From NCBI RefSeq assembly GCF_016432865.1, contig NC_067401.1, positions 190,340,001-190,404,000 of the forward strand: a DNA stretch of 64,000 nt, written 5' to 3'. Under the pieces are notes generated by a model. That model had not been told where the DNA came from. It saw only the letters and a program-made list of their open reading frames with translations, and made no database searches. The translations under genes and the position numbers were made by a program. Of the stretch, positions 15,903 through 45,424 are shown piece by piece. This DNA is from Antechinus flavipes. Lineage: Eukaryota. Position 1 is the first letter of the stretch, and every line of letters begins with the position of its first letter.

Positions 15903-17423
15903 ATGAGCCGGAAGCGGCCCCGGCTTGTCCCGGAGACCTTCGGGTCTAAGAGGCAACAAGGACCAGGAGAGGCCGGTGAGGAATTCCCGAAGGGCGAGTC
16001 AGGTAACACGGGAGGGAGAGCAGAGGGAGCTCTGCGGGAGCCCCGGGACGGCCCTTAGGGCTGGCGCCCAGAGAGAAAAGGGTCCAAGCCCCTGACTAGA
16101 CCCCTTCCCTAGGGTCGGTGCGCAGGGCCCTTCGCGAACTGGGCGAATTGTTCCCCAGGCGGCTCTTCCAGGACGCACTGCCTCCCATCGCCCTCAAGAG
16201 CCAGGTGTACAGCCTCGTGCCAGACCGGACCGTCGCCGACAGGCAGCTGGTGAGAGGCACCAGGATGGGCAACCGATGAGGGAGGGATCAGGAGACAGGG
16301 CCCAACAACTAGTCAGAAAGGACCAGGGGCTCTGAGGGGGGTACCGTGAAGGGGACTAAGGAGCTGGGGGCCGGGTAGCTGGGAAGGGGATCAGGGAAGG
16401 GGCAGCTAATAAGGAGGACCGAAGGATCAAACTGGTGTCTGGTCAAGAGGAGGGAAGGCCTGACAGCTCATGAGGGCGACCAAGGGACCAAGGGAGTAGG
16501 AGTCAGGGGTAAGGCAGCTGGCTGAGGGGGAACCAATGAATGGGTCAGAGGCTGGGGAACTGGTGAGGGGGATTTGGGGACGTGGGGAAGGGCATTGGCC
16601 CCAGCACCATCAGCAGCGGCTCTTGAAGAGAAACCAGAACCAATGGATACACCGATTTGGGAGGAGGGGGAGGGACAGGCAAATAGAAAAATAGTTGGAG
16701 ATAGAAGTAGCAAAACTGTCAGGTTGTTGTGTGAGTAAAAGAGAAAGATACTATATGGTGATGTCATATAGCCAGCCAACTAGTAAGAAGTATTGAGTGG
16801 ATAGTTGGTGAAGTGAAACTTAATTTTTTTGATTTTTTTTTTTAATTGTCAAACTAGTAGACACTTCCTAGTTTCTACTAACCTTTTACTACACAGATGG
16901 TGTTTGGTTTTTCCTACATTGAGAGAGACATCAGAAAAAAAAACTGGCCTTTACCCCATTCCCCTTTTATCCCAGACTCTATCTTCCACCTTATAAACTT
17001 ATTCTCACTCTCCCCAAGCATAGCGGTTTTGATATGTCTTATTTTCCATCTCTCCTGAGACAGAGAGAACTTCGGGAACAAGGGGAGATTCGAGTCATTC
17101 AACTTGGCTTTGATTGTGATGCTCAAGGGATTGTCTTCACTGAAGATTTTAAGGCCAAAGTATGTATATATGTGTGTATATAGGGTAATGGAACTAGAGA
17201 TTGGGGAAATGTTGAGGTCTAGTAAGACTAATGGAAAGATATTAAGGAAGGAGGCAAAAAAAGCATTTTGTGTGTTAATAAACATTAAGTTCTTACTATG
17301 TGCCAGGCATTTTGGATACAAAAAGATAGTTCCTGCCCCCTAGAAGCTTACAGTCTGACAAGGAAGACAATAAGCAAATAGCTTTGTACAAAACATGCTG
17401 TATGCAGGATAAAAGAGGAAGTA

Positions 17424-17474
<51 letters not shown>

Positions 17475-19244
17475 GAATTGGAGAAGATGCTATGAAAAGA
17501 AATGGGGTGGGAAGGGAAGGAGGGATTTTGGTGGAAGGCCACATTGGAGTTTGGTTGCCTTTTCCCTCTTGTTTCTTCTTCAGGCCCTGGAATCTTGCAG
17601 GGGCTGCCCATTTGAAGGGACAGTGCAGAAGTTTCTAGCCCTGGTACTTCCAGCCTGTGGAGACCTCAGCTTTCAACAGAATCAGATGATCCAAACCTTT
17701 GGTTTTAGGGACTGTGAGATAACGTGAGTGTTGGCAGCATAAAACCCATCAGTTGATGACTACATCTATGATCTTATTATAATCTTTTCCCTTACTCTTT
17801 TTTAACTCTCCTCCTAATATTCTTTTCCTGGCAGTGATGCTTTCTCTCCCATCCTTGCTCATGGGGTTATCTGGGAAGGTTGAGAGTTATATGTATCTCA
17901 TTCGAATGTGGGATTTCTCAAAATTGAATTTCATCACTTAAAAAAAAAACCCTAAAAGATACATCAAGTTTTTATAACAGCGACTTACCCTTAGTTTTAT
18001 CTTTATATTACCAAACTGGTATTGGAACAGTACAAACTTGGTTATTTCCTTTTCCTTATAACATAGTAGAGAAAGAGATCAACTTTTGTTCTTCTAGAAA
18101 GAGGACTTAAACAATGAAAAAGTATGCTGTTCATATCCCCCCATGACATTGACTGAATTTTTCTTTTTCTCTCACTGCAAAGGGAACCCAGGCAAATTAC
18201 ATTCCCTCTTTCCTTAAGGTAGGAATTAAGGAGCTAAGGTAGAAATTAAGGGATTAAGAAGGATGATTTCTAGAGGTCAAATTGTCACTTCCTTTCCACT
18301 CCCATCCTAGGCAGCTGGTAAATGCTGGAATCCTCACAGTCCGAGATGCTGGGAGCTGGTGGCTGTCAGTGCCAGGAGCTGGAAGATTTGTAAAATATTT
18401 TGTTAAAGGTGCTGGTTTCTCTTTCCTTTCTCTAATTATTCCAAAAGTGTAAATCACAGTTGTCCTTTGTCACCTCCGCCCCAACTAAGGATACTTAGAA
18501 GAGAGCTCAGTGATCATATCCATTGTCTTGTGTGTCTTACATGTGCTACAGTCCCTGCTTTTGTGACTTACTCTGATCTGCTCTTTTTCTTCTAGGGCGA
18601 CGGGCAGTACTTGGAATGGTTCGAAAGTCCAAGTATCGGGAGCTGTCCCTTTCTGAGCTTCTAGGCAGACAGGCTCCTCTGTCTGTGAGGCTTGGTCTTC
18701 CCTATCATGTACACGATCTAATTGGAGGACAGTTGCTTGACATGTAAAGATCTATCTTAACTTATTCCCTTTCTTCCTCCTGCCAAATGTTAAATCATCT
18801 AAGACTGGAGCTTTACCTTATCTTGATGATCTACAGGACTTGCTTTTTGATTGCCCACCCCAGTTTTCTGTAAACATGGAGACTCTTAATTCTTCCTATT
18901 CCTTACCTTTGTCTCCTACCCCACCCACCTTCCTTTTCCCACTTCTAGCTAGGCAGCACAGTGAATAGAGTACTATGCTTTGGATTCATGAAGACCCGAG
19001 TTCAGATTCTGTTTCACTTACTAGTTATGGGATAATGAGAAGTCATTTATCTCTGTCTTCTTCAGTTTCTTTAGCTTAAAATGCATCACAGGATTGTTTT
19101 AAGGATCAAATGAGGTGATAATTGTAAAGTGTTTAGTATAGTGCCAGTCATATAGTAGACATTGTATAAATCTTATTTGCTTTTCTCTTTCCCTACAGTG
19201 TCCCTACCACATCTGGGACTCTTCTTCGCCTGCCTGAAACATAA
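15903..19244 (+). CDS. STK19: STK19 / WHR1 (RP1), winged-helix DNA-binding transcription-coupled repair factor, 7 coding exons, 245 aa
   Basis: Exons 15903-15975, 16113-16249, 17064-17159, 17584-17723, 18311-18408, 18596-18743, 19199-19244 (738 nt). Translates MSRKRPRLVPETFG..., LPPIALKSQVYSLVPDRTVADRQL, VRDAGSWWLSVPGAGRF, YHVHDLIG, TTSGTLLRLPET*. Confidence 0.95.
17426..17470. repeat. (GT)n microsatellite in STK19 intron 3
   Basis: Uninterrupted GT dinucleotide run. Confidence 0.95.
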
Positions 19245-23800: not shown

Positions 23801-26800
23801 GGAGAATATAAGAGAGATGGGAAAGGTGGTGAAGATAAGTGGGATGGGACAATTTTAATTTCTTTTTCTCTGATTTCTCTTTTACCTTCCCTTAGGGCTT
23901 GGTTCAGGATGTCTCTGACTCTCCAGCCCCTGGTATCCCCATCAAAGTTTCCATCAAATTTATCACCTCAGGTGTTGATTCTAATATCCAGGTTCTTAAC
24001 CTCAATACAGATGAGAGGGGTCAACTCAGCATCCCCATCAATATTCCCCAGGCCACTCAAAAGTTGCAGCTCATGGTGAGAAGGGAGTCAGATACTGGGC
24101 AAGGCAGGAAAAAGTAGGGGCAGGAGGAGGGGAAGCCATGAGTTAGAACCTTATATCACTCAGGAATAAGGTGGAAAGCAGTTGAAGAATCAAATTGCTA
24201 TGTCCCTCTGACCATTCCTTTTATTGCTTCCTCCCAGGTATCTGCGGGATCCCCTTTCCCAGCAGAAGCCACCATTATTGCCCATGCTCCACCTTCTGGA
24301 GGCCCTGGGCTCTTGTCCATGGAGCGGCTGGATTCCAGGCCTCCCCGTGTGGGACAGACATTCACTCTAAATCTTCATGCTGTGGGAATTGATGGTGCTG
24401 CTTTCTCCCATTACTACTACATGGTGAGGACAGGCCAGTAAGCACAGGATTGTTGGAGCAAAAATCAGGGCAGAGACAGTGAGGAATACAGGAGGATAGA
24501 AAGGAAGCTCCTTTCAGATCCTTGTGTCTCATCAACTACTATGATACTCCCAGGTCTTGTCACGTGGAGAGATCAAGTCTGTGCATCGAGTGGTAAAAGG
24601 AGCTGTGACTTCTATCTCTGTTCCTGTAACCTCCCATCTTGTACCTTCTTTCCGCGTCATTGCCTTCTATTACCACAATGGTCTGCCAGTCGCCAACTCC
24701 TTGAAAGTAGATGTCCAAGTGGGAGATTGTGAGGGGAAGGTAATTGGGATGGGAAGGAGATATGGGAGAAAGGAGCTGTAGGTCAAAGACAGCTCAGAAA
24801 ATGTGAAAAATAAGGACCAACTTCTTTCCAATAATGTCCTGCCTTGTTTTTTTCTCCTCTATTCTTAGCTGGAAATGAAAGTGGAGAGGGGAGATCTTCG
24901 ACCTGGGGAGCAGCTGAGACTAAATTTATACACAGATTCCTCAGCCATTGTAGCTCTGGGGGCTGTGGATACTGCAGTGTATGCAGCAGGTGGCCAGAAA
25001 CACAGCCTTCTCCATATGAACAAGGTTGGAATCCTAGTCGCCAGAGTCTCTTCTTTCTCATCTCTTATGTTCCTCAAACCCCTTAATCACTTTGTTCCTC
25101 TTCTTTCCTTTCAGAAATCCTATTTCAATTCCTCTTCAGATTTCACCCTTTTCTGTGGACCTATTCCACATGTTCAATACTCTTTCTCTCACAGCAACCC
25201 TCCTTTTTCTGTTTTCCCTACTTCCATTTGTCACCAAGTTCCCTCTTTCTCCTTTTCCCTCAGTTTTTGTTTACTCTTCTCCCTCCTGTTTGCCCTTCAG
25301 TTACCACGTCCTGGAGTATTTCTTGTCTTTCTTCCCTCAGGTCTTCACTGCCATGAACAGTTATGACCTGGGTTGTGGTCCTGGGGGTGAGATCAATGCT
25401 CTCGAGGTTTTTGAGTCCGCTGGTTTGATGTTTTCAGATGGATACAAGCGGACCTCACCCAGGAAAAGTACGAACAGAGTTTTTTGGTGGGGGTAGGTGG
25501 GTAGGAAGAATTAAAAGTAAGAATGGAGAAAAGGAGTAGAATGGAGGGAAAATGGAGGGAGGTGAGATAGTATGGGATAGCACTGGTCTGGGAGGCTGTT
25601 AACAAACTGAGTGACCTTGAGTTTTCTCTCTGGTCTTTACTCTGCTTATCTGTAAAATTAGGAAATAAGAATGAGTTATCTTTAAGATCCTTTTCAAAGT
25701 TTGATACTCTGGGATTAAGAGAACCCGAAGAAGAAAGGAAAAGGGGTGGATCGGAAAAGAATGGAAATAGTTTTATGTAAGAAATGGAAGGAAAGGACAT
25801 GGGATCTATGTGACTAGGCCTCCATCCTTTTATAATTTACTACTGTAGACCTGAGATGCAAGGAAAATAAAAGCCGAAAAAGAAGAAATGTGGATTTCCA
25901 GAAGGCAATTCTTCAGAAGAGTGAGTGACAAGACTAGAACCAGAACCATATCTGTGTCTGATGGTGGGGGGCTATTTCCAGTGAACATTCTTCCACTGCC
26001 CACAGTGAATCAATATGTTGGTCAAGTCAAGCACTGCTGCAAAGATGGGATGACACCATTGCCGATGCGTCGATCCTGCAGAGAACGAATGACCAGAGTA
26101 CCAGAACCTACTTGCCGTGAGGCCTTCCTGTCCTGCTGCCAATTTGCTGAAGAGCTTCGTAAAAAGACCCGCATTAGGGGCAGCATGGGGCTTGCCCGAG
26201 GTAACAGTTATGGGTATTGGTTATGGCCTGAGTGGGTATTCAGTGAGGAGTGCTATTTATAACTTTTTTCATTCATCCCAGCCCAGGATATGTGGAACGA
26301 GGAAGAAGAACTGCTCGTTGAAGATGATATCCTCGTCCGGAGTTATTTCCCCGAGAACTGGCTCTGGTCCCTGTTGACAGTAGACAAAGTTAAAAAGTAA
26401 GGAGACCAGGAAGACATTTCAGATGCCTCCCCCCAAAAAACACCACACCCCTTGGGAACCCCAGCATCCAGTTCCCAGATTTGATAGTTGTTCTTTATGC
26501 TCCTTCAACACAGGGTTTTTGAGTATGTCCCTGATTCTCTGACCACATGGGAAATCCATGCTGTGAGCCTTTCCCAGACAAAAGGTGACAGCAATACTCC
26601 TACTCATCCGTTCTTTTTTGCTCTCTCCCATCTTATTCCCTTTTCTTAATATCATCTTTACATGGAGTTTTGTGTCCTTTAGAGTATTCTGCTGATTATC
26701 TTGTGGTTTCCCAAGGACTAGCTCCCTGGGATCTTTCACTTTTCCCATTGGAAAGAAAGTTGGGAGAAAAGGGAGGGGAAATTCTGCTAGTTGGTCTTGA

Positions 26801-29800: not shown

Positions 29801-32800
29801 AGGCAACTGCTGGGCTCCTGGGATCTCATGCAGCCGCCATTACAGCCTATGCCCTGACCCTGACTAAGGCCCCCGAAGCTGATCAGAATCTTGCCCATAA
29901 CAATATTATGACCATGGCACAAGAAGAAGGAGGTAAATGTCTAAGGACCCAGTCATGACCCTGGGAGCTAATAGATGGATCTGAGCTCTTGTGTTGAAAG
30001 GAAAGAAAGGAGGAAAAGAAGGAAGGAAAGAAAGAAGGAGTACCTAGTGGGTGCCAGGTATTGTGCTAATATCATCTCATTTGGTCCTTATAGCAACCCT
30101 TTGAGTTATGGATTCTTTCATTCCCATCTTACAGATGAGCAGCAAATAGAGATTAAGTGATTTGCTCAGGATTATACTAGTAAGTGGCTGAGGTCACATT
30201 TGAACTTAGGTCTTCCTGACTCAGTATGACTCCTAGCAGTCAGAGCAGTGATCCACTTACAACACCTAGCTGCCTAGAAAATTGAATCCAGCATGACAGG
30301 ATTTCAAGGTTTGTGATAGGAGAAGCGAAGGCTAGGAAGGAATCAGGATGTAGAGGAAGATAAAAGAAGAATTACAAGATTTCAGAATGAACAAGGGAAG
30401 AGACAAGGTTTTAGGCCTAAAAAGAATAGCAGGCCACTCTTGGGGATAAAATAAAAAGCTACAAAAAAGAGAATTCTGGGATAAGGAGGCATGAGCATTG
30501 TGATTATATTTCTGACTCTGTGACTATTCCTTTTTCTGTTTCACTTTTTCCCTCTCTGCTTTTATCTTCCTTATACCTCATAGACGATTTATACTGGGGT
30601 CCAGTTGCTGGGTCTCAAAATAATGCTATCTTACCAACTCCAAGTGCCAGTGGTGGCCCCTCACAGCCCACTCCCCTGGCTCCGGCCCTGTGGGTAGAAA
30701 CAACAGCCTATGTGTTGCTCCATCTCCTTTTGCGAGAGGGGAAGGCTGAGTTGGCTGATCAGGCTGCAAACTGGCTAACTCACCAGGCGAGCTTCCAAGG
30801 GGGATTCCGCAGTACTCAGGTATAGGGGACACTGAATGCAGGGTCCTGGGGAGTAATTGGGGAGGGAGGCAGAGAGGAAGCAGATTCCCATAAGCTCTGG
30901 ACTAGAGAATGATGTGAACTTTTCCAGGACACAGTAGTTGCTCTGGATGCCCTATCTGAGTACTGGATTGCCAGCCATACGCCCACAAAGACCACACTAA
31001 ATGTGACTCTGAGCAGTCAGAATCGCCAAGGAACTAAAGCCCACATCATTAAATTAAACAACCATCAAACATCAGGGATACAAGAGGATCTACAGGTGAT
31101 AAGCCTTTGGATTTGGCCATGGAGACTATTGGGGACTGGGGCCTTAAAAGTGAGCCTAAAGATACTGGCTCTCACCTGTGCCTCATCTAGCTATAGCTCC
31201 TGACCTGCACAACTTCAGAGCAGAGAGGGCTTAGTTGCTCCTAGGGAATGGGGGTGAGGACAGGGGCACTTATATAGTTCCTATTCTCTTCTCCCCCCAC
31301 TTTCTAGATATCCTTGTTTTCTTTCCCCCTTAGCATCTCCCTCTCTTAGCTAATTTCCCTCCCACTAAAGAGGGAATGGGTTGAATAATGGGCCAAAAGC
31401 TTCTCTTTTCTCATTTGATATGTTTCTCTCTTCTTACTCTCCAAAAGTTCCCCTTGGGCAGCAAGATCACTGTGAAGGTGGGAGGAAGCGGCAAAGGGAC
31501 CTTAAAGGTGAGAACTGGAGAGGCTGGTGGGCCAGAAAGATGATCTGTGATTAGGAGAATTAGAGTTGACTTAACTGCTTTCTTTGTATTCCTTACACTT
31601 AGCACAATGCTTTACACATTTTAAGTACTTAATAAATGTTTGTTGATCAACTTACTGACTTCCTGAAAGGTGAGGAGGGAAATCCTATTTATCCAGAAAG
31701 GGAAAGGACACCAAAGACCTCTCAATTCAAGGCAAAACACTTCATCTTAGAGCTGGTAATGTGTAGTCTAATCAACTGTTTCATGGAGAAGCTCTATAGA
31801 ATGAACTGAGTAGGAGAAGCTAGTAATGTATCCAAAATAGGATGAAGAATAGGGACAGAATGATTCTGATTTCTCCCCTTGCCCTCCAAATAAAATCAAA
31901 ATCAAAACTCTTCTCCCTTCCCAAGATTCTACATAAATTCAACATCCTGGAGGAGAAAAATACAACTTGTAAAGACTTCAGGCTGGAAGTGATAGTCACA
32001 GGCTCTGTCCAATATTCAGGTGAATGCAGGGTCAGAGGGGGTCTGTATATTTGGGTCCCTGAGGGAAGTGGGAATTAGGGAACAAGACACTTGGATCCCT
32101 TCTCATGTCCATGTTCCAATGCTAGAGGAATCTGATGATGACTATGAATACTATGAGGAAGAGCCCCAACTTAGGGATGACCCAAGTCCCTTGGTGTCTC
32201 CTGTGACACCTCTGCATCTATTTGAGGGTCGTCGGAACCGCAGAAAGAGGGAAGCACCCAAGGCAGGAGATGAGAAGGAGCAGAAAGTGCATTATGAAGT
32301 ATGCATCTGGTAAGTGCTTGCAGGTTGGAAGTACTTGAGGGAGATGAGAGCTTGAAGATGAAGCCAGGGACTGGATAATCAGATGCCTATATCCCAGGGT
32401 AGTAAATAGGAGGACAGCTGGCGGACTAACTGGGAGGTGGATTTTTGAGTCAAGGGTTGAACTTCTGGGTCAGTAGAAGCTGGAGTCAAAAGTATCTCTC
32501 CTCAAAGGCGAAGTGATGGAGTCAGATTCCCTGGAATGGCTATCGTAGACATCACCCTGCTGAGTGGATTCCATGCCCTACACAGTGATCTAGAAAAGGT
32601 AGGATTGTTGTTCTTCCTTCCCAGTTGGGTCATTGTTAATCTTGTTATCTCTGGAATCCTAGGTTTTTGGTTCACATTTTATTTCTGACACTTACCTATG
32701 TGACCTTGACCTATTCCTTTACATTCCCTGTGGCTCATTTATAAAATGAAGGGATTGAATTAAGATGGTCTCTGAGTAGTCTTTCAGCTCTCAACAGATC

Positions 32801-33125
32801 TTACCTTCTGTGACCTTCCAGTTGCTTTCAGACATCCAAGAATTCAGGTCCCTTTTGTCTGTCTAGACTCAGCTATCTCAATTTCTACAACTAATTATTA
32901 TTCTTGTCTAGATGAGGCAATTATGCTAGGTACTGTTCTTGTTCCCATTTTCTACTTCAATCGCTTTGGTCCTTTGGGTGGGAAGTTCTGTGGTGTTTTT
33001 TTCCTTGACCTCTGTTTTTTCTTTCTAGTTGACATCACTCTCGGATCGTTACGTGAGTCACTTTGAGACCCAGGGACCCCATGTCCTGCTGTACTTCGAT
33101 TCGGTGAGAGAGAGAGAGAGGAGAG

Positions 33126-33185
<60 letters not shown>

Positions 33186-33547
33186 GCAAAACTCCAAGGT
33201 GGCCTTCCACCAAAATCCCTCCTTCCCTTCCCACCCCATTTCTTTTCATAGCATCTTCTCTGATCCTGTTACACACACACACACACACACACACACACTT
33301 AATTACTTCCTCTTTTATCTTGCATACAGCATGTTTTGTACAAAGCTATTTGCTTATTGTCTTCCTTGTCAGACTGTAAGCTTCTAGAGGGCAGGAACTA
33401 TCTTTTTGTATCCAAAATGCCTGGCACATAGTAGGAACTTAATGTTTACTAACACACAAAATGCTTTTTTTGCCTCCTTCTTTAATATCTTTTCATTAGT
33501 CTTACTAGACCTCAACATTTCCCCAATCTCTAGTTCCATTACCCTAT

Positions 33548-33605
<58 letters not shown>

Positions 33606-36600
33606 TTTGGTCCTAAAATCTTCAGTGAACAGGGGGATTCCAGCTTCTGCTCTGTACAGTCCAGTGTTGGGCTGAGTATCTGGGGAATATAAAGAACATG
33701 GTTGCTACTATCAAAAAAATAACAATAATTATTACTGGGTCTTCACTGTGGTAAGGCAATCCATTTAAATCTCCCAACTTGACTGACCATCCCACAGCGA
33801 CTTTTCCAAAGTTCCCCTTCTCCCCACCCTCTCATTGATTGCCATTCCTCATATTTCACTGAAAAAACCTGAGATCATTCAAGGGACTCCCTCTTCTCCC
33901 CTATTTCTCATCTTATATTACTTTGACCTCATCATTAAACTGAAATTGCTCTTTGTACATTGTCTCCCTTATTAGATTATGTCTTCTGTGTGAAAAGACT
34001 CCTTTTTGCCTTTCTTTATATCTCTAGAATTTAGCACATAGTAGGTGCTTAATAAATGATAGTTGACTGACATGAAAAATTTTGTAGTTACAATTGTTAT
34101 TTTTATAACCATTTTATTACAATTCATTATTTACAATTTATTATTATTATTTAATACAATGTTATTTTATAAACTTTTAAGGTTTATAAGGCTTTTTATT
34201 TCAATGAAAAGTCACCCAGAAGAAAAAGCAAGACAAATCAAATCACACAGACCAAAGAACTATTGAGTTTATAAAGTGTCAAGGTCTAATTCCTTGATAA
34301 ATTCAGTCTAGCCACAGATTGGTTGACTGGTCAGCATTGAAAATGTTCATTTATTTAAGTCTCCACTGAATGCAGAGTACTCTATTGGTAGCTGAGAGAA
34401 TTAGAAATGTCTAAACATTAGTTTAGATTAAAAAACTCACTCTCATATAATACTTTTAAGATTTATGAACATAGGGCAGCTAGGTGGCACAGTGGTTAGA
34501 GCACCAGTCCTGAAGTCAGGAGGATCTGAGTTCAAATCTGGCCTCAGACACTTAACACTTCCTAGCTGTGTGACCCTGGGCAAGTCACTTAATCCCAATT
34601 GCCTCAGGGGGGAAGGGGGAATTTTGGGCATTTCCCCCCCAGACCAGATTGTGAAGGAGATAGCACAAGTTGAGTTATTTCTGTCTTATAGAAGGGGAAA
34701 CTGAGTGTGTAGAGAGGAAAATGACTTGCCCATTTTCCTCCCTTCATATGTAGTGCTTTTTTGCATGAGACCCTGTTACCTTTTATATGGAGCTTATGTT
34801 AGTTTAAAGACATGAGTTTAACTGGTTGATATCTTACTCATTCCTGATCTTCCCCTCAATCCCATCTCCTTAAAATCTAGTTGTATTTGCCTCACATTCT
34901 CTCAAAAGGTCTTGTCCTAGAGAGTCCTCCCTTGGGCCTGAAAGATATCCTTCACAGACCTTGCAGATATAGGTGAGGGATTACTGATTTTACAAAATCA
35001 AGGAGTATGTGAACTTTGGATGGGAAAACATCTCCCTTTTTTAATAACCTCTGATTGAAATGTAGCATTTCTTTTGATCTTTTAAAAATGCTATTCTGAG
35101 AAAGGGACTTTAGGCTTCACCAGACTGCCAAAGGGATCTTGGATGCAGAAAAGGCAAAGAACTCTGGTTCTTGGTTGCTCTTCTGGAAGCACTACCCTCA
35201 TTTTCAACCATTTCTTTCCACCTTGGTCAATTTGCTTGAAACTTAAGTCATTGTTAAAACTGGCTCTGCTTATAAGTGAAACTGACCTTTTTCATCTGAG
35301 TTCTAATAGACATCAAGGTCCAGCATCATTTCGTGGACAGTGTTGGTTGCTGCCATTATCTATTTTTTTCCCCAGTAAATTTATTTATTTTCCATACACA
35401 TTCTTTATGAATCATGTTGGGAGAGAAAAATCAGAAGAAAGGGAAAAATCATGGGAGAGATAAAGAAAAACAGAAAATAGAAGTGAACATAGCATATATT
35501 GATTTACATTCAGTCTCCTTAGTTCTTTTTCTGGATGCAGATGTCATTTTCTGTCCAAAGTCTATTGGGATTGCTTTGGAAGTTGCTGCCATTATCAGCC
35601 CCTGAGACTGCCTGCTACCATGATCTCAAACAGATTGACTTTCTCTTTGAGTCATGCCCTGCTCCTGTTTTTCCCTGTCTTCTGACCTACTGTGAAATTT
35701 CTATTTCTGATTAGACCCTGGGATAGCTATAATTCTGAACCCTTTGGTAACACTGAGATGATAGATACTGCTCATATTAATAGGTTAATAACCAATTGCT
35801 CATTGACTCATGTTAGTAGTTTTCATGTTTTTAGTAGTTTCTGAGGTAGAGACTGATAGCTAAACTAGGAAGAGTCAAAAAAGAAAAAGAAAACTATAGA
35901 CCAATTTCTCAATGAACATTAATGCAAAATTTTTGAATATTAGCAAGAAGATTGTAGCAATATATGAACAGAATAATGCCACATAATAATATGACCAAAG
36001 GTTTATACCAGAATCAGGGCTGGTTCAATATTAGGAATATTGAACAGCATAATTTACCATATCAATAATAAAATCAACAGGAATCATATCTTAATAGATG
36101 TAGAAAAAACTTTTGACAAAATGCAGAACCCATTCCTATTTAAAATACTAACAGCATAGCAAGAAATAGACTTTTCTTTTAAATGGTAAGTATGTATCTG
36201 TTCAAAACCACCAGAAAGCATTATATGTAATGGGGATAAGCAGGAAGCTTCTCTGTACCTTCTCTGTACTAGAGATGTTAGAGCTATAAGAGAAGAAAAA
36301 GAAATCGAAAGAATTAGATCAGGCAATAATGAAACAAAGGTATTATTCTTTGCAGATGATATGATGGTATATTTTAATCAACTAAAAAGCTATTTGAAAT
36401 AATTAACAACTTTAGTAAAATTGCAACATAGAAAATAAAGGTAGGGCTTCGAGAACAGCAGCCATAGCAGACTCTACCTTTTCTGTGCTCTACAACCCTT
36501 TGGCAGTCTGGACTCAGTGAATATTCAGACCTCCCCCAAGCTGAAATTGCCATCTCCCCGCCAGAAGTCCTCTGGCAGTTTTTGGTGTAGCAATTTTTAA

Positions 36601-39327
36601 AGACAGCAAAAATACAGACTTAAGGAAGAATCATTACATCACATGGTATAATGAAAGAAGATGAATCTGGTGGCAGGGCTGGAAAGGAAAAAGACTGGAA
36701 GCAAAGAGACCAGTTAAGAAGCTTTTTAAGAAACAAGGCCTGAGAGGGTGAAGGCTAAGACTAATAGAGTTAGCAGTAAGAATGGGGGGAAAAGAGACAG
36801 ATAGGATAGATGTTTTGAAGGAAAAAATTAGTAACTTAAAGGTGGAATAGGAAAAAATCAGAGTTATTTCCTAGGTTGGCAGCTGGATGGTGCTGGGGAT
36901 AGAGCCCTGGGCCTGGAATCATGAAGGCCCAAGTTCAAATGTGGTCTGAGACACTTAATCTAGTCACTTAACCTCTGCCTTAATATCCTCAATTGTTAAA
37001 TGGGGATAATAACAGTTCTAACTTTTCAAAGTTGTGACTAACAAATGAGATAAAATATTTATAAAAGCTTTTACTTAGCTTGGCACATAGTAGGTACTTT
37101 ATTTCCTACCATCAGGCCTTTTAAACTGGCTGTCCTCTTAGACTTAAAACCACCTTCTGCAGAGAGCTTTTCCTGGTCCCTCCAGAGCCTGTACTTTCCT
37201 ATCTAAAGTTTTTTTCCATCTATTCAGCATGATAGATTTATAGGTGGAAGGAACCTCCAAAGTTTTTTTGTACTCCACCCTTTACTTTATAGATGAGACC
37301 AAGACTTGAAACCAAGAGAAATTAAATGACTTGCCCAGGTTTTTAGAATTAGTTAATTAGTAGAACCCAGATTTTACCTTGGGTCCTCTGATATCAAAAT
37401 GATTGCTTTTCTCATTATATGATTACTACCCCTGGATTAAAATAACAGAACAAAATGAAGAGAAAGCTGAGAGCAAAGAAGATAATGGAGAAAGCTAGCA
37501 AGAGAGAGATAGTAGATTGGGGGACAGGGATGATTTAAATAACCACTTGAGCGTTCTTTTACTGTTACCTCAGGTTTCAGCATCCCGGGATTGTGTAGGC
37601 TTTGAGGCTGTGCAGGAGGTGCCTGTGGGGTTGGTGCAACCAGCAACTGCTGTTCTTTATGACTACTATGAGCCTGGTAAGTAAAAAAAGGAAGCATGGG
37701 AGAACCTGGACTTCAATATATAGGGAGGTAGGATGGGGGAAGAAGGGAAATGATGAAATAGCATGGGGCACACAAAGATCTTGGGCATTCTGAGAAAACA
37801 TAGGATTATTTGGAATTCTTGTCTGATTTGAAGATGAAAAGAGAGTCTTGAGCCTAAGGTCCTTCCTCCCCTTCCCCCCTTATTATTGTGCCATGGACTT
37901 TTCTCCTCCATGGAGAAGTAGTAGGGGAAATGGAGAGACAGTTTTGTGACTATCTGTGACTTTTTTATCTTTACAACAGAGCAGAAATGTGTTGTGTTCT
38001 ATGGGGCCCCACGTAAGAGTAAACTCCTATCCACACTGTGTTCTGGAGATGTTTGCCAGTGTGCAGAAGGTAAGTTAAAAACAATACTAGATAGGTAAGG
38101 TGTGAATTTAGGGGGAATATCATACATACTTTTTGGAGCTTAAGGCACCGGAAATAATGAGAGACACATACAAATAGAAATCAAGGTATATAACAGTTCC
38201 TTTCTGTGTTCTATTCTTTTCTTTTCCCCCATGAAGGGAGGGAGTTACAAACATATATGATTAAGCAAAACAAATTTCTGCTTTAGCCATTTCCAAAAAT
38301 TGTCCAAACCAAACTAAAAAAAAGGCTCCATCTGTGTTTTGAGTGCATCATCCCTCTATTAGGAAGGTATGTGGCAAGTTTCATTGTGAGTTCTCTTTCT
38401 CTGCTCATCACACCCTGTTTTCTCCTTTCTTAGGAAAATGTCCTAAAAAATACAGACTCACAGAAGTGGAAAAAATGGAGGAAGAAGTCAGGATGAACTA
38501 TGCTTGCTATGATCCACGTGTACATTATGGTGAATTGATAACCTTCAAGATCTTGCCTTTTTCTTTAGGGAGCCAGGAATCTTAAGTCTTCTAGTTCTGT
38601 ATTTTTTTCTAGATACTTCCCTCCTCACCCCAAGCTTTTGACTTAGTATCCAACCATATCAAGTTTAATTCTCTCAACTCCCAGGGTGACCTCTGCTCCC
38701 TTCTTCCCAATAACAGGTTTCCAGGTTGAAGTTCTCCGAGCAGAGGACAAAGCTGCCTTCCGACTCTTTGAAACTAGGATTACCCGTGTTCTGCACTATA
38801 GTATTGATGGGGGCTGCAAACATTGGGTGGGGGTAGCTGGGGAATGGGGATAAGGGTGGCAGGGGGATATCCCTGCCCCTCTAATGTTTTCTTCTTTCCT
38901 TCTCTTAGCTCAAGATGTCAAAGCTGGTATTGGCCAGACTCGAAACTTCCTGGTCCGAGTTTCCTGTCGTTTGCAGCTCGAACCTGGAAAGGAATATTTG
39001 ATCATGGGACTTGATGGAGTCACCTTCGACATTAAGGGACAGTGAGTTATCTATGACTTAGAGGGACCCTGTTACTTGTATCTTTGGCTTTTCCCTGAGG
39101 CCCCAAACCCTTATTCCTTTGGAGACTCACAGACCCAGGCCTTCCCTCCCTCTAAGGTTCTCATCCCTGACTCTTTCTTACATAGGCCCCAGTATTTGCT
39201 GGACTCCATGACTTGGATTGAGGAGATACCGTCTGAAAAGAACTGCCAGGCCTTAAGATATCGGCCTGCTTGTGCCAACCTCAGTGAATTCCTCCAGAAA
39301 TATGAAACACAGGGCTGTCAGGTTTAG
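20869..39327 (+). CDS. C4: Complement C4 precursor, 41 exons, 1747 aa, intact
   Basis: Exons 20869-20933, 21107-21311, 21587-21788, 21956-22026, 22119-22207, 22579-22661, 22782-22878, 23086-23191, 23293-23419, 23648-23763, 23896-24075, 24238-24423, 24554-24739, 24869-25024, 25341-25467, 25849-25920, 26006-26200, 26282-26396, 26514-26584, 27032-27171, 27283-27486, 27844-27895, 28251-28340, 28556-28765, 28972-29047, 29181-29337, 29503-29640, 29761-29932, 30584-30819, 30928-31095, 31448-31507, 31926-32019, 32126-32309, 32508-32598, 33029-33103, 37574-37676, 37980-38069, 38434-38529, 38717-38800, 38909-39041, 39186-39327 (5244 nt). Features: beta-alpha site RKRR, C4a ending GLAR, thioester GCAEQ, PCPVIH, sulfotyrosine-type [10 protein letters not shown], alpha-gamma site RRNRRKR, ends QGCQV*. 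Confidence 0.97.
22380..22526 (+). repeat. Templated insertion in C4 intron 5: copy of C4 24700-24800 flanked by 17 bp direct repeats
   Basis: 22406-22506 matches 24700-24800 with 4 mismatches in 101 nt. tgtatataagagcaaca occurs at 22380-22396 and 22510-22526. Confidence 0.9.
28051..28194 (+). mobile_element. Marsupial CORE-SINE (WSINE1-like) in C4 intron 22
   Basis: ggcagctaggtggcgc...gagttcaaat...caagtcacttaacccc with a poly-A tail. An agaatggg repeat on both sides is TSD-like. Confidence 0.85.
33128..33182. repeat. (GT)n microsatellite just inside C4 intron 35, preceded by a (GA)n run
   Basis: Direct observation. Confidence 0.95.
33185..33629 (-). pseudogene. Inverted fragment of STK19 (last ~24 nt of exon 3 plus most of intron 3) inside C4 intron 35
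   Basis: The reverse complement matches 17136-~17559. I counted 6 substitutions over ~245 nt between the two microsatellites and 5 over the next ~83 nt. Confidence 0.92.
33780..34070 (+). mobile_element. Degenerate LINE-2 fragment
   Basis: Ends in a typical L2 3' terminus (tagcacatagtaggtgcttaataaatg). Confidence 0.55.
34473..34606 (+). mobile_element. Marsupial CORE-SINE (WSINE1-like) in C4 intron 35
   Basis: gggcagctaggtggcacagtggttagagc...gagttcaaatctggcctcagacacttaacacttcctagctgtgtgaccctgggcaagtcac. Confidence 0.85.
35885..36440 (+). mobile_element. Degenerate LINE-1 ORF2 reverse-transcriptase fragment in C4 intron 35
   Basis: Frameshifted remnants of [24 protein letters not shown] and LFADDM.VY. 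Confidence 0.85.
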
Positions 39328-39504
39328 GGGATGATATTCTCTCCTTCCTCTCCCCCACCCCCATAGAATTTCCTGTGGTTCACACCTGCTCTGTACTTTC
39401 TCATCCCTTCTTTATGAATGGAAGGGGAGGCCTAATTATATCAGGATTTACTCTTGACTTCTACTTTCCTTCTATTCTCACCTCTCAAACTGGAAACCAA
39501 CTTA

Positions 39505-39510
39505 ATAAAA
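39505..39510 (+). terminator. C4 polyadenylation signal
   Basis: AATAAA ~180 nt after the stop. Confidence 0.7.
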
Positions 39511-41035
39511 ATTGTTTGATAGCCAAGTCAGTGATGTTTGTTTTATCTGTGACCATTTTCTCTGGATCACTGCTCTTGGACATAGGACTGCTACATCTAT
39601 GACCACTGTACCACATTTCCACTTCCCTTAACCTTTTCTCTTACCCAATTACTGTAACTACTTCTAGTCTCTCCTTGATTCCTCTCAGACCCATTCTTCA
39701 TTCCTCTGACCTTTTAGCAAATCCTGACCCGTAGGTCTCTTGCCACACCCCCTTACTCACCTGTACTTTTCTGCCTAGCCAGCTACCATCCTTACCTCCA
39801 GGAACATTATAACTTTGAAACTGATTCCATTGGAAACTTGTTTCTATCAGCATCATGTTACTTACCCATGTCATAGCAGCAAGTTCCTCCATTCCCTTGA
39901 TTCTTTTCCTAGCCCATTTTTCTGTAATTTCTCATCATCCTGTACTCTTCCTGCTTTGACCTACTCTATATTATTCCTTATTCCTTTCTTTCCCTCTCCC
40001 TTAAAACCCATGATTGTCCTGGCTTTGTCCTCTGGTTCTATCTTTCTCTTTAGCTTTGTCCTCTTACATCTTCCATCGGTACATATAACATAATGCCATG
40101 AACACTACACTGTTGCATATGTGTTCTGTTAAATATTGGGGAAAGAATTGATTAAAAAATAGGGAAGCACTTGACAAATGATCTCACTTGAGCCTTATAA
40201 TAACACTATAGAATAAGATATTATCCCCATTTTATAGAGGAAGAAACTGAGGCTGAGAGAAATTGAGAATTAGCTAGTCAGTTTCAAAGTAGGAATTTAA
40301 ACTTGTTTTCCTAAGTCCTAAGTCTAACACTGTATCCACTACATTGCCTTCATGGCAGAAACCAAGGTTGGATAAGGAGACATGCAGTTAAGGTTATCCA
40401 GACTTAGTTAGTATGGCATAATGAAGATTACTGATTTGGAAGAGAAAAGGCCTAGGTTCAAATCCTCATTCTGTTATTTATTACCCTGAGTTACCTTAGA
40501 CAAATCATTTAAACTTATTGGGGCCACAGTTTTTTCACCTTGTAAAATAAAGAGGGTGGGGGTGGGGGTGGGAGGTATCAGATGAAGAAGGGAGATTTTC
40601 AACTGAAAAAAATATAATTTGAAAAACAAAAAACAGTGATTGTAATACAAACACTAAACTATTTACTTAATGTGACTCTTGAAGTCTTGGATTCAAATTG
40701 TAGAGACTTTTAATGGTAATTTTATCTACCTTTTTCCACTCATCCCTCAATTCAGAACTAGTAACATCTGAAATTAACTTGGCCTAGATATTCAGTCCCT
40801 TACCAATGCTACTCACCCAGACAAAGAATGGCACTGAGATAGTAAAATATTTAATTGGAATGGAAATAATAGCTAAAGTAACAGAATTGTCAGTCACATT
40901 TAACAAATATCTTGAGTTTAGTTTTTGATAAGCTCATGGTTTAAAATTAAAAAAATACTGAGGAATGGAACCATTATTCAACAAAAAGAGTGAAATGGCA
41001 AAAAAAAAAAAAAATAGGGTAACAATCTTAGGTTA

Positions 41036-41760
41036 TATTGTTCAGTTATTTCAGTCGTGTAGATATGGCCATGTAATGAGATTCAGGAAAGCAAAGATGA
41101 GTTGCAGATGTTGTGAAGATCTGCAATGAGTTGTTCTCCCTGCCTAAAGGTATCTTTATTTACAAGTAAAAGTCTCAGACAAAATCCAAGTATAATTTTG
41201 TGCCATACTTTGGGAAGGGGCAATTTTTATAGACCAAAGGAAGGGGAAGAAACTAGGAGAATGTTTTGATTATCAGGAGATTTAGGAAGATAAGGGATGT
41301 TTTGGAAAACAGTTGTGGTGATGTTTTGCTCAAGGGTAAGATCAAGGAGGAGTGGGGGAGAATACTCGAAGGACAAAATCAGGGAGGAGTAGGGAAGAAT
41401 GCTTGAAGGATAAGAGCAAAGAGGAGTTGGAGAGAGACATCATGGATAAGGACAGTCAGGGGAGATTTGGGGAAATACTTTCAGAATGAGTTGAGTAATT
41501 TTGACTTAGGGGAAAAGCAAGCTGACTTGAGTTCCCATCAATGCCATGACTCCATTTGGGATTTTCTTGGCACAAAGACTGGAGTGGGTTGCCATTTCCT
41601 TCTCCAGCTCATTTTACAGATGAGGAAACTGAGGCAAAGAGAGTTAAATGATTTAGCCAGGGACATACAGCTACTATGTCTGAGGCTAGATTTGAATTTA
41701 GGTATTCCTGACTCTTGGCTCAGTACCCTATCCAATGTGGCTGTTAGCTGGTCCATCAAT
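41036..41760 (-). mobile_element. Mar1-type CORE/RTE SINE split by a ~490 bp LTR-like insertion (41058-~41546)
   Basis: The SINE end ttgttcagttatttcagtcg resumes at 41547 as tgactccatttgggattttcttggc...tttacagatgaggaaactgaggc. The insert begins TG and has a minus-strand TATAAAAA (41224-41231) and AATAAA (41155-41160). Confidence 0.6.
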
Positions 41761-42278
41761 GGTCCATCTTCATAAGATACACATAATATATACATATGTA
41801 CATATATGTGATATATATGCATACATATATATTGATATAATACATACAGAATATATGTTTGTACACATTTGCAATATACAAAAATAAGTCAATGACTACA
41901 AAATAATAAAAGTAATTGGAAGAACAATATTAATTATGAGAGGATTATTTTTATCAATCAATAATCTTATGCCAGACACTGTACTGGATATGTGAAAAAC
42001 CAGTGAAAAGATGAAACAGTCTCTTCTGTCTTCAAATATAAGAATTCATTGGAGATAAACTGATAGGTTTGATTATGCAAAAAAAAAAAAGAATTCTGCT
42101 GAATGAAAATAATGTCTAATCTGAGAAAGAAATAAAGAGTTGGAAAAAATTTAAAGTAAATATGTCAAATAAAAGATCTGAGATCAATATTGAGATGAAT
42201 ACTTCTATATATATGAATACTATAAGATACATACTTCTCAGTGGAGTAGTGGTTAAAAGATACTGAACAGATCATTTT

Positions 42279-43047
42279 CTTTTTATTTATTTATTAATTT
42301 TTTTATTATAGCTTTTTTATCGACAGAATATATGCATGGGTAATTTTTGCAACATTGTTCCTTGTTAGAATCCTTACAAAGTGATAAATCAGTTGCCTAA
42401 TTTAGCATGGTACTTAGCAAATTCTCTAGCTCACTAATGTATTTAAGTACTCATTGGAGTTCACACTTTTGGAAGATTCACAAGTCAGTATTCAGTATGA
42501 GATTCACAAGTCAGAAACCCATAATCCCACTCTCTCAGAGGAGGAGTCAATCTTTGGGTTCACACCTTTAAGAGATCATATATAAGAAGCTTTTAGAGCT
42601 TCAGTTAGTCAGTTCGGAAGGTTGCCAGGAGTCGGGAAAGCTAACCGGGCCCAAGGTAAGAGACAAGACTTGGAAGGAGAAAATAAACGTTTGGATTTTA
42701 TCAGCTGGCTGCATTTGAAGTGATTATTACTTTGAACTGAAACTAAGGCTGTCTCCAGAAAACCTCCCCGAGAAATCTGCTCCCAGAAAACCCTCATATA
42801 TTATACAAAAGAAGAAGAACGCCACAGTTCCTTGCACTCACTTTTGTTCCAACTTTCCCCTTCCCTCCCTCCAACTCCTCCCCTAGATGGCAGGCAGTCT
42901 CATACACATGTTAAAGTATATCTTAGATACGATATATGTGTGCAGATCCGTACAGTTCTCTTGTTGCACAAAAAAAATTGGATTGAGAAGGTAAAAATAA
43001 CCCGGGAAGAAAAACAAAAATGAAAGTAGTCCACATTCATTTCCCAG
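42279..43047 (-). mobile_element. 5'-truncated LINE-1 3'UTR insertion hosting a nested solo LTR
   Basis: T-tail at the left. 15 bp TSD tgaacagatca(t/c)ttt at 42264-42278 and 43048-43062. Homologous to the + strand copy at 44390-44688. Confidence 0.75.
42363..42826 (+). mobile_element. ERV solo LTR with 6 bp TSD
   Basis: TG...CA termini, TSD gttcct at 42357-42362 and 42827-42832, TATATAA at 42579-42585 and AATAAA at 42682-42687. Confidence 0.85.
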
Positions 43048-43179
43048 TGAACAGATCACTTTCAAAGAGGACCTAATTGTTAATAGACATATAACCTGCA
43101 GCCCATGATTCTTGTTGACTGACATATTGGATATAATCATGATTGTTGTCATTCATTTGTTCAGTTGTACAAGTATGCC

Positions 43180-44050
43180 CGGAAATCTTTGGGATTTTCC
43201 TGCCCACTGTATTCCCCTAAATCTGAACGAGTTGCATGCTAGATTTTCTTAGGGTTGATTTCCTTCCCTTGTCTTTCATATGAGCCATTCTGGACCTCTG
43301 CCACTGTGGCTGCATTTGACCCTGTCAACATTATGCCATCAGTGTGTTGGTATTCACCTGTTTCTCTCAGAAGGAGAAGCCTCTTCCAGGTTTCTGTCCA
43401 TCATAATGTGGTAATACTACGGAGAATCCTGGGGAAGGGTATGAAGACATATGCCTTCCCAGGTGAAAGCAAACTGTTCCTGACTAGTCTCAGTCCTAGA
43501 AATAGAGAAAAAAGCATTGTCAAAATTGATAGCCCTACTTCACCCCACCTGAGCCTGAGCTACCTGGTCTTCAATATTGACAGGAACATTGACAAGATCA
43601 GGGACAGCTGTAGAGATAAGCATAGCAACTTCTCAAGTGCTATCTGCTTCTCTCACAGGATTGTTGTTGTAAGAGGATATGGGATAACAGAATACTCCAG
43701 CTGCCTTCATCTCTATCATCTTTCCTTTCCCTCCCTCTGCCATATTATATGGTGGTATGGTTGAGGTAACTAAGGATTTCCATTTGGTTGTACCCCCAGT
43801 AACATGTCTAGAGGTTCCTAAATAGGCCCTCCCAGAAAGGGACCCTATAATAATCCTCTTTGGACTGACCCTGTAGCCTTCCCTGAAAGATTCAAATGAG
43901 GCTGGACCTTTAGAGAATATCTCGAGCTTGGTGGTGCTAAAGGGCCCCAGGTCCTACATACTTAGTTTTCCTGTATAGTTTTATTAGCCAGAAAGAGTTG
44001 GCCATCAATTAGTCTCATCAGACCCTTGTTTCAGGAGCTATACGCCAATC
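43180..44050 (-). mobile_element. Degenerate class III (ERV-L-like) endogenous retrovirus pro-pol fragment
   Basis: Minus-strand translation across stops and frameshifts gives TKWK, AVPDLV, INFDNAFFSI, QEQFAFTWEG, LPQD, HTDGIMLTG, EINPKKI and FRGIQW. These are colinear with ERV-L RT motifs (IDLANAFFSI, QKQFAFSWQG, LPQG, HYIDDIMLIG, EINPTKI, FLGVQW). The segment above ~43800 is weaker. Confidence 0.8.
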
Positions 44051-44389
44051 TCCCTTTTGGGGACAGTATCATTCTCCTCATCCCATCTATCTCTATTACT
44101 TCTATTCGCAAACTATTTGTAGTGACAGCAAAATTTATTCATCACAGCTGTCTCAGCCTCTTACTCAGATTTCACCAGCTGATCAACCTATACATGTGTA
44201 TCTGTGTGGTGGTAGAAATTCATAGCTAAACTCGAAGACACTCAAGTGGGGTTCCACCTAGAAATCAGAGAGGTAATTAACTGAAATTCTCTGAAATATC
44301 ATTTGTTCTTTCTATATCTACCCAAATTTTGTAGCTGATGCAATGTCATCCACAGGCTGAAGAAGCAATCTTAAAAAAAATCCAGAAGG

Positions 44390-44688
44390 AGCTACACTCA
44401 AAGAAAGAACACTGGGAAATGAATATAAACTGCTTGCATTTCTGTTTTTCTTCCCGGGTTATTTTTACCTTCTGAATCCAATTCTCCCTGTGCAACAAGA
44501 AAACTGTTCAGTTCTGCACACATATATTGTATCTAGGATATACTGTAACCTATTCAACATGTAAAGGACTGCTTGCCATCTGGGGGAGGGGGAAGAGGGA
44601 GGGAGGGGAAAAATCGGAACAGAAGTGAGTGCAAGGGATAATGCTGTAAAAAATTACCCTGGCATGGGTTCTGTCAATAAAAAGTTTT
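44390..44688 (+). mobile_element. 5'-truncated LINE-1 3' end with 17 bp TSD
   Basis: aaaaaaaatccagaagg at 44373-44389 and 44689-44705; L1-type G-rich 3'UTR and AATAAA. Confidence 0.8.
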
Positions 44689-45116
44689 AAAAAAAATCCA
44701 GAAGGGACTGACTTATAAAATGATCCCTTCTTTCCCTTAAATATTACTAGATAAGGACTTTAAAATAAGGAGAAAAAACACTATTTAAAATTGTTTATAT
44801 CAATGTAATCTAATTTTGAAAACTTACTAGCAAAACATAATCAAGCCTTTATTTCCCATTAGATATCTTTGGGAGCAACTTGAATATATATCCTAGTTCT
44901 TGGATTTTTAACAATCTAATTTTTTTTGCTTTACTAAAGTTTAGTGCTCCATTAAATTTTTTTAAAAAGGCACCACCTTTTAGTCTTATTCTTCTTTTTG
45001 GAGGATATATACCCTCACCAATATCCTAGATATATATGTATACACACACACACACACACACAGATTTCTCATATCAATTTGAAGGAATGAGGTATTTATA
45101 CATTAATATTATACAG

Positions 45117-45424
45117 NNNNNNNNNNNNNNNNNNNNNNNNNNNNNNNNNNNNNNNNNNNNNNNNNNNNNNNNNNNNNNNNNNNNNNNNNNNNNNNNNNNN
45201 NNNNNNNNNNNNNNNNNNNNNNNNNNNNNNNNNNNNNNNNNNNNNNNNNNNNGATGGTAAGCTGAAGTTACATAGTTTAACCTAGTTACNNNNNNNNNNN
45301 NNNNNNNNNNNNNNNNNNNNNNNNNNNNNNNNNNNNNNNNNNNNNNNNNNNNNNNNNNNNNNNNNNNNNNNNNNNNNNNNNNNNNNNNNNNNNNNNNNNN
45401 NNNNNNNNNNNNNNNNNNNNNNNN
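45117..45424. other. Assembly gap: N runs at 45117-45252 and 45290-45424 around a 37 nt island
   Basis: N characters. Most of the island repeats the sequence starting at 45425. Confidence 0.98.

What the first reader, a model, noticed from the sequence alone, without database searches (positions are those of the whole stretch)
33185..33629. Recent inverted copy of STK19 exon 3/intron 3 embedded in C4 intron 35
Seen: the reverse complement of 33185-33629 matches STK19 17136-~17559. It includes coding sequence (TTCACTGAAGATTTTA..CCAAA), the exon 3 donor and both intronic microsatellites. I counted 6 substitutions (all transitions) in ~245 nt, so the copy is young but not identical. It starts immediately after the (GT)n tract behind C4 exon 35, suggesting microsatellite-guided template switching. 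Established: RCCX rearrangements in human and mouse create partial STK19 copies in direct orientation at module junctions. An inverted STK19 piece inside C4 is a different kind of RCCX rearrangement that I do not recognise from the literature.
Basis: partly seen in the sequence, partly recalled or inferred. Interest (0 to 1): 0.7.

Follow-up and report, generated by a model that had tools for sequence, protein, structure and literature searches.

The report
Backwards STK19 fragment inside C4 intron
A 440-base piece of the neighbouring STK19 gene (the end of one exon plus nearly the whole next intron) was copied backwards into an intron of the complement C4 gene of this marsupial; it is a real but ordinary DNA-repair scar with no sign of function.

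Summary
Window 33186-33629 (+) is the reverse complement of 17136-17552/17562. Outside the microsatellites I counted 14 differences in about 357 aligned bases. Nothing else in the 64 kb resembles it.

The source is genuine STK19. Its flanking exons match solved STK19 structures at residues 80-110 and 113-158, so the copy went from STK19 into C4. The host intron follows C4 exon 35; six exons lie downstream. That intron is 4.5 kb long and full of transposon relics.

I read it as a copy-and-paste "patch" placed at a break or stalled fork beside a (GT)26 tract, most likely neutral. It resembles class-2 templated sequence insertions or MMBIR-type template switching.

LINE-mediated insertion is not supported, because there is no target-site duplication, poly(A) tract or poly(A) signal. 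It is not an RCCX module rearrangement.

Interest is low.

The parts
33186..33629 (-). Inverted copy of the STK19 fragment. In STK19 sense (minus strand) it holds the last 24-25 nt of the exon, the donor (GTATGT changed to GTGTGT) and about 395-405 nt of intron. It lies in a C4 intron.
   Evidence: (I1, I4)
17136..17562 (+). Source segment in STK19: the exon end 17136-17159 plus intron 17160 to about 17552-17562. The intron ends at 17583, so the copy stops 21-31 nt before the 3' splice site, leaving out the polypyrimidine tract.
17061..17159 (+). STK19 coding exon (third coding exon in the window), ending ..GIVFTEDFKAK with donor GTATGT.
   Evidence: translation; matches solved STK19 chains at residues 80-110, E 8e-11
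17584..17724 (+). The next STK19 coding exon. It defines the 424-nt source intron, 17160-17583.
   Evidence: matches STK19 residues 113-158, E 3e-18
33029..33103 (+). C4 exon ([25 protein letters not shown]), followed by donor GTGAG. It is exon 35 if the gene has 41 exons.
   Evidence: A2M_recep, weak, E 0.047; six further C4 exons downstream, stop at 39324
33104..33185 (+). Start of the host intron: a compound microsatellite, GTGA(GA)n..ATTTT(GT)26.5, then TAT. The insertion junction lies at its 3' edge.
33271..33298 (+). (AC)14 brought in with the copy. It is complementary to the resident (GT)26 tract, and a GU:AC hairpin is predicted in C4 pre-mRNA.
   Evidence: MFE -75.2 kcal/mol, z -3.9
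33548..33600 (+). (AC)13.5(AT)13.5, expanded in the copy from a short AC/AT patch in the source (17160-17180).
33630..37573 (+). The rest of the 4.47-kb host intron. It is rich in transposon relics: a SINE head at 34475-34563 and L1 reverse-transcriptase-like ORF pieces at about 35995-36400. The next C4 exon starts at about 37574.
   Evidence: (D4, D7)

Best explanation
This is a germline copy-and-paste insertion. A DNA break or stalled fork arose in the C4 intron at the 3' edge of a long (GT)n tract. It was mended with a roughly 427-nt patch templated from STK19, 16 kb upstream on the same chromosome. The patch covers the end of the third coding exon and nearly all of the following intron, and it was joined in reverse orientation. 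The donor stayed intact. The patch was made either by two replicative template switches (FoSTeS/MMBIR-like) or by end-joining capture of a copied fragment (class-2 templated sequence insertion). Since then the two copies have drifted apart by about 3-4% and their microsatellites have changed length. The copy sits antisense in a large, transposon-filled intron and most likely does nothing.

Shown: the duplication, its borders, its polarity from STK19 to C4, and its position beside the (GT)n tract. Inferred: the break, the repair route, the neutrality and the age.
For: The pair is 96-97% identical over about 357 non-microsatellite bases and has no third copy in the window. The homology crosses an exon-intron boundary of a conserved gene, which rules out a transposon consensus as the common origin and fixes the direction. 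The 17 substitutions and the different repeat lengths mean the copy is a separate, older locus, not a mis-joined read of the source. The junction lies at the edge of (GT)26.5, and GT tracts are documented break and recombination sites (PMC5948810). There is no target-site duplication above chance (longest shared flank word 6 nt; 757 of 2000 shuffles did as well). There is no poly(A) tract and no AATAAA near the 3' end of the copied piece. Those are the negative criteria of class-2 templated insertions (PMC5110952). The best DNA run holds 0.78 of the sampled words of 32700-34100, while a genome without the insert could hold at most about 0.757. That is weak support. Two other notes fit the same process in this genome: a 108-nt direct templated copy elsewhere in C4, and a reported inverted intron copy in SRCAP (an unchecked note).
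Against: I could not obtain an orthologous empty site, so microhomology, deletion or filler bases at the junctions cannot be read. DNA-templated and RNA-templated routes therefore cannot be separated. The k-mer margin (0.78 against 0.757) is within sampling error of 153 words. I could not search the rest of the genome, so the direct donor could be another STK19-derived copy elsewhere. As the sequence now stands I see at most 1 nt of microhomology at either junction, which fits end joining better than MMBIR.
Confidence: 0.68

Rival explanations
1. LINE-mediated retro-insertion (class-1 templated sequence insertion or orphan transduction). An unspliced STK19 pre-mRNA fragment was reverse-transcribed by a LINE ORF2-type enzyme at a nick in the C4 intron, and the (GT)n tract derives from its tail.
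For: The + strand reads ..GAGATTTT immediately before (GT)n. A TTTT/ nick followed by cDNA of the RNA's 3' end would give this layout, with the STK19-sense 3' end next to the repeat. A-rich retroposon tails can evolve into microsatellites (my own knowledge). The host intron carries L1 and SINE relics.
Against: There is no poly(A) tract. No AATAAA or ATTAAA lies within 280 nt upstream of the 3' end of the copied piece, and no target-site duplication exceeds chance. The (GT)n tract is continuous with a (GA)n tract that starts in the C4 donor itself, so it looks like a resident compound microsatellite. All three class-1 criteria of PMC5110952 were tested and not met, or were inconclusive.
Confidence: 0.1
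2. Assembly artefact. The segment does not lie in C4 intron 35 and was placed there by a chimeric read or a collapse at microsatellites.
For: The segment is bounded by or filled with dinucleotide repeats that break short-read assemblies. The same window has two N runs at 45117-45424. No reads could be laid.
Against: The copy differs from the source at 17 positions and in both repeat lengths. A chimera of source reads would be identical, so at the least a second genomic copy exists. The right junction (33629/33630) lies in unique sequence. The best run's word share of 0.78 slightly exceeds the ceiling of 0.757 for a genome without the insert.
Confidence: 0.07
3. Member of a dispersed family, or copied from a different donor. 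The fragment exists in several places in the genome (for example picked up once and spread, or taken from a second partial STK19 copy in another RCCX-like module), so the STK19 gene in this window is not the direct parent.
For: The middle of the segment is an old MIR-type SINE tail; one search gives weak 74-80% hits at 34010 and 37078, and the identification as MIR is from my own knowledge of that element. The rest of the genome could not be searched. Divergence is uneven: 2.4% in the core against 6-10% at the ends.
Against: The homology extends well beyond the SINE relic on both sides and into the coding exon. Other SINE tails in the window are only 74-80% similar over 40 nt. Only one STK19-C4-CYP21-TNXB unit is present in the window. 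A look-up of part of the sequence in the scan's notes was blank.
Confidence: 0.1
4. Functional inverted repeat. The two complementary arms pair in read-through STK19-C4 RNA or between the two pre-mRNAs, or they drive inversion between STK19 intron 3 and C4 intron 35, and so link the regulation or stability of the two genes.
For: The arms are about 440 nt long, 96% complementary, 15.6 kb apart and in co-oriented neighbouring genes. The insert also creates a predicted GU:AC hairpin 27 nt from the C4 donor.
Against: I have no RNA data. The substitutions show no A-to-G or C-to-T bias on either strand: taking the source as ancestral, the sense-strand changes are G>A 6, A>G 5, T>C 3 and C>T 1. That argues against an edited RNA intermediate, though it says nothing about present-day RNA editing. 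The copy evolves like its intronic source, and its exon part took two non-synonymous changes and a donor change.
Confidence: 0.04

Closest known systems
Class-2 templated sequence insertions (TSIs/TSIPs; Onozawa and Aplan, PMC5110952)
   Same: A few hundred bases templated from elsewhere in the genome are inserted at one site while the donor is kept. The template can be intronic. There is no target-site duplication, poly(A) tract or poly(A) signal. The event is heritable and apparently neutral.
   Different: The donor here is only 16 kb away on the same chromosome, not 'distant'. Junction details (microdeletion, microhomology, filler) cannot be read without the empty site. The species is a marsupial, and the insertion is not shown to be fixed or polymorphic.
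FoSTeS/MMBIR template-switch insertions
   Same: A short, nearby, inverted templated segment is inserted with the donor intact. Proximity of donor and acceptor is typical of fork-to-fork switching.
   Different: Those junctions usually show 2-5 nt or more of microhomology. I see at most 1 nt in the present sequence, but the copies have diverged by about 4% since the event.
RCCX module duplication leaving partial STK19 (RP2) in human (PMC2193198)
   Same: Same gene neighbourhood (STK19/RP, C4, CYP21, TNX), and a partial STK19 copy results.
   Different: RP2 is the 3' part of the gene, in direct orientation, at the junction of tandem modules of about 30 kb made by unequal crossover. Here an internal 0.44-kb exon-intron piece lies inverted inside a C4 intron in a single-module locus.
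HERV-K(C4) in human C4 intron 9 (long versus short C4; PMC2193198)
   Same: A C4 intron tolerates a foreign insertion. From my own knowledge, HERV-K(C4) also lies antisense to C4.
   Different: That is a 6.4-kb endogenous retrovirus with its own integration mechanism, not a templated copy of a neighbouring gene.

Membership tests
Class-1 TSIP (LINE-1 ORF2-mediated) | Target-site duplication of at least 5 bp at both junctions | tested here: not met
   The longest word shared by the flanks is 6 nt and is not adjacent to the junctions; 757 of 2000 shuffles did as well.
Class-1 TSIP (LINE-1 ORF2-mediated) | Non-templated poly(A) tract of 10-40 A, with a poly(A) signal 10-30 nt upstream in the template | tested here: not met
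   There is no A tract; the 3' end abuts (AC)n on the sense strand. The only AATAAA in the source is at 17277, about 275-285 nt from the end.
Class-1 TSIP (LINE-1 ORF2-mediated) | Insertion at a 5'-TTTT/A-3' site | tested here: inconclusive
   ATTTT precedes the (GT)n tract, but 56 nt of repeat plus TAT lie between it and the insert.
Class-2 TSIP / DSB patch repair | Templated insert from another locus with the donor retained | tested here: met
   Both copies are present. The donor exon and intron are intact and the donor exon matches STK19.
Class-2 TSIP / DSB patch repair | No target-site duplication, poly(A) tract or poly(A) signal | tested here: met
Class-2 TSIP / DSB patch repair | End-joining marks at the junctions (microdeletion, microhomology, non-templated bases) | not testable with these tools
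A 'TAT' between (GT)n and the copy could be filler.
RCCX modular rearrangement | Tandem duplication or deletion of a whole RP-C4-CYP21-TNX module, with a direct partial STK19 at the module junction | tested here: not met
   The window holds a single unit: STK19 from about 15.9 kb to about 19 kb, C4 ending at 39.3 kb, CYP21 at 56.9-60.8 kb, and the TNXB 3' end from 62.7 kb on the minus strand. The copy is inverted, internal and 0.44 kb long.
Dispersed repeat (SINE/LINE family) | Many copies with shared element borders, all relating to a consensus | tested here: inconclusive
   Within the 64 kb there are only two copies, and their borders lie in a coding exon and in unique intron sequence. The rest of the genome was not searchable.

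The most novel reading that the evidence does not exclude
The inverted pair is more than a scar. The 440-nt complementary arms in STK19 intron 3 and C4 intron 35 would either pair in RNA (read-through or in trans), giving double-stranded RNA that couples the two genes, or mediate a recurrent 16-kb inversion that disrupts both STK19 and C4 in this marsupial lineage.
Probability: 0.04. Interest if true: 0.6.

Novelty: new member of a known kind. Interest (0 to 1): 0.22.

Why it matters
The finding adds one clean, polarised example of a local inverted templated insertion in a marsupial germline. The exon end marks the donor, so the direction of copying is certain. It lies beside a long GT tract in a medically well-known gene neighbourhood. 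It says nothing new about C4 or STK19 function. If related species are checked, it could serve as a rare-genomic-change marker for dating or grouping them.

Tried and rejected
Later database queries used 17061-17159, 17584-17724 and 33300-33400 only.

2. Orthologous loci in related species.

3. Exons were searched one by one by reference. For that reason, and because of cost, I did not use the large protein searches.

4. Microsatellite-guided switching is rejected on strand polarity.

5. An edited RNA or deaminated single-strand intermediate is rejected. The 15 transitions run in all four directions and none is at a CpG. Finding 15 or more transitions among 17 differences has a probability of about 0.05 by hand under an assumed 2:1 bias, so it is not remarkable.

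6. Later gene conversion of the core (2.4% divergence against 6-10% at the ends) is not significant once the cluster of four changes within 8 nt next to a microsatellite is counted as one event.

7. A lariat-derived origin, suggested because the copy stops near the branch-point region, is rejected because the copy includes exon sequence upstream of the donor.

8. The literature searches found no paper that links marsupials with RCCX or STK19 rearrangements.

9. I did not run a metagenome pattern scan for the junction; the prior chance of a hit was negligible.

Full report
**What is there.**
I read both stretches and aligned them. Window 33189-33629 on the + strand is the reverse complement of 17136-17552. 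With a 3-nt gap the match extends to 33186 and 17562.

- The repeat finder reports the pair as I1 (297 nt, 96%) and I4 (110 nt, 95%).
- Local blastn on the non-repetitive parts gives: left 82 nt with 5 mismatches, core 246 nt with 6 mismatches (97.6%), right 30 nt with 3 mismatches.
- A base-by-base walk finds 17 differences: 15 transitions, 2 transversions, none in a CpG.
- The two microsatellites inside the segment differ in length between the copies.
- No other place in the 64 kb resembles the segment. The next best hits are 40-nt, 74-80% matches to the tails of other old SINEs.

**Gene context.**
The window carries marsupial-type tRNA-derived SINE heads (families D4 and D7; the identification is from my own knowledge). 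The gene order is as follows.

| Gene | Position | Strand | Evidence |
|---|---|---|---|
| SKIV2L | ends at about 12.7 kb | + | DSHCT domain, E 1e-16 |
| DXO-like ORFs | 12.8-15.5 kb | - | not tested against a family |
| STK19 | from about 15.9 kb | + | Pfam Stk19 hits on two exons |
| C4 | stop at 39324 | + | |
| repeat-rich spacer with two N runs | 17.5 kb long | | |
| CYP21 | 56.9-60.8 kb | + | |
| TNXB 3' end | from 62.7 kb | - | |

This is one STK19-C4-CYP21-TNXB unit, not a duplicated RCCX array.

**Polarity.**
The exon at 17061-17159 matches solved STK19 structures at residues 80-110 (E 8e-11). The exon at 17584-17724 matches residues 113-158 (E 3e-18). The source intron is therefore 17160-17583, 424 nt.

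The copied piece is the last 24-25 nt of the exon, the donor, and the first 393-403 nt of the intron. It stops 21-31 nt before the 3' splice site, so the polypyrimidine tract is left out.

Because the homology runs into a conserved coding exon, the copy went from STK19 to C4 and not the reverse. In the copy the exon remnant has two changes that would be non-synonymous, and the donor changed from GTATGT to GTGTGT. That is expected for dead sequence.

**Host site.**
The C4 exon at 33029-33103 encodes [25 protein letters not shown]. Six further C4 exons follow, starting at about 37574, 37985, 38437, 38716, 38910 and 39190, with the stop at 39324. 'Exon 35 of 41' therefore fits.

The intron is about 4.47 kb and holds SINE and L1 relics. 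It opens with a compound microsatellite, GTGA(GA)n..ATTTT(GT)26.5. The insert starts 3-6 nt after this tract.

**Mechanism.**
I tested four routes.

Both the C4 tract and the STK19 intron tract are (GT)n on the + strand. A 3' end paired through them would copy STK19 in direct orientation and would start at the source repeat. The copy is inverted, and its end lies 82-92 nt from that repeat. This route is rejected. The GT tract remains plausible as the fragile site (PMC5948810).
- **LINE-mediated class-1 templated insertion (criteria in PMC5110952).** There is no target-site duplication above chance, no poly(A) tract, and no poly(A) signal near the 3' end. Only an ATTTT before the GT tract is suggestive. 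The criteria are not met.
- **Edited or deaminated intermediate.** The transitions run in all four directions. Rejected.
- **Class-2-type patch repair, or two replicative template switches.** All features I could test fit: the donor is retained, the template is local, orientation is arbitrary, LINE marks are absent, and the site is next to a fragile repeat. The junction fine structure needs an empty site, which I could not obtain.

I commit to the last route at about 0.68.

The antisense orientation may be survivorship. In sense orientation the fragment would place a strong donor inside a C4 intron. This is inference.

**Age.**
I counted 14 differences in about 357 non-microsatellite positions, 3.9%. 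That falls to 3.1% if the cluster of four changes in 8 nt next to a repeat is one event. At commonly assumed mammalian neutral rates of 1-2.2e-9 per site per year, this gives roughly 9-20 million years. The rate is taken from my own knowledge and was not calibrated for this species, so 'recent' is only relative.

**Artefact and repeat-family rivals.**
- A chimera of source reads would be identical to the source. The 17 substitutions and changed repeat lengths therefore show a separate genomic copy.
- Whether it truly lies in this intron rests on the assembly. The only independent hint is weak. The best DNA run holds 0.78 of the sampled words of 32700-34100. A genome without the insert could hold at most 0.757. 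The difference is within sampling error.
- A dispersed family is unlikely, because the borders lie in a coding exon and in unique intron sequence. The rest of the genome could not be searched.

**Limits met.**
I worked beside those places afterwards and sent none of their letters to any search tool.
Exons were searched singly by reference.

**Comparison with what is known.**
Human RCCX rearrangements give a direct partial STK19 (RP2) at module junctions: RP1-C4-CYP21A-TNXA-RP2-C4-CYP21B-TNXB (PMC2193198). This event differs in scale, orientation and mechanism.

It belongs with templated sequence insertions and template-switch insertions, which are known genome-wide. The searchable literature holds no marsupial RCCX or STK19 paper.

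Two further observations suggest the process recurs in this genome. A 108-nt direct copy of another C4 exon-intron junction lies in an upstream C4 intron, flanked by a 16-nt direct repeat. An earlier, unchecked note reports a 113-nt inverted intron copy in SRCAP.

**Verdict.**
The feature is real and correctly described. The mechanistic and 'new kind of RCCX rearrangement' reading is only partly right. It is a new member of a known kind and of low interest unless RNA or population data show an effect.

Noticed in passing
window 22406-22513 and 24700-24807: A 108-nt direct copy (95%) of a downstream C4 exon-intron junction sits in an upstream C4 intron. It is flanked by a 16-nt direct repeat, TGTATATAAGAGCAAC, at about 22380-22395 and 22509-22524. 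This looks like a target-site duplication, so it would be a second, differently made templated insertion in the same gene (first-reader note s1-189124).
   Followed up: partly
window 33130-33298: The insert brought an (AC)14 tract 88 nt downstream of the resident (GT)26 tract. In C4 pre-mRNA these are predicted to pair as a long GU:AC hairpin starting about 27 nt from the exon 35 donor (MFE -75 kcal/mol, z -3.9). Any effect on splicing is unknown.
   Followed up: partly
window 39325-56900: The spacer between the C4 stop and CYP21 exon 1 is about 17.5 kb. From my own recollection the human spacer is only a few kb. It is full of repeats and has two N runs (45117-45252, 45290-45424) embedded in an 8-10-nt periodic array. 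I did not fill or examine the N runs.
   Followed up: no
window 54309-55100: Three tandem 264-nt units (94-98% identical) lie in the C4-CYP21 spacer. This is a young minisatellite-like array and is not coding on inspection of the ORFs.
   Followed up: no
window 47398-47772 and 51509-51879: A 375-nt inverted pair at 88-92% identity. Direct pairs at 20010-20324 and 51866-52174 (75-83%) lie nearby. All look like copies of the same transposon families, not local templated copies.
   Followed up: no
window 33261-33268 versus 17473-17480: Four transitions fall within 8 nt, right next to the (AC)n tract. This is a cluster that looks like one complex mutation at a microsatellite border.
   Followed up: partly
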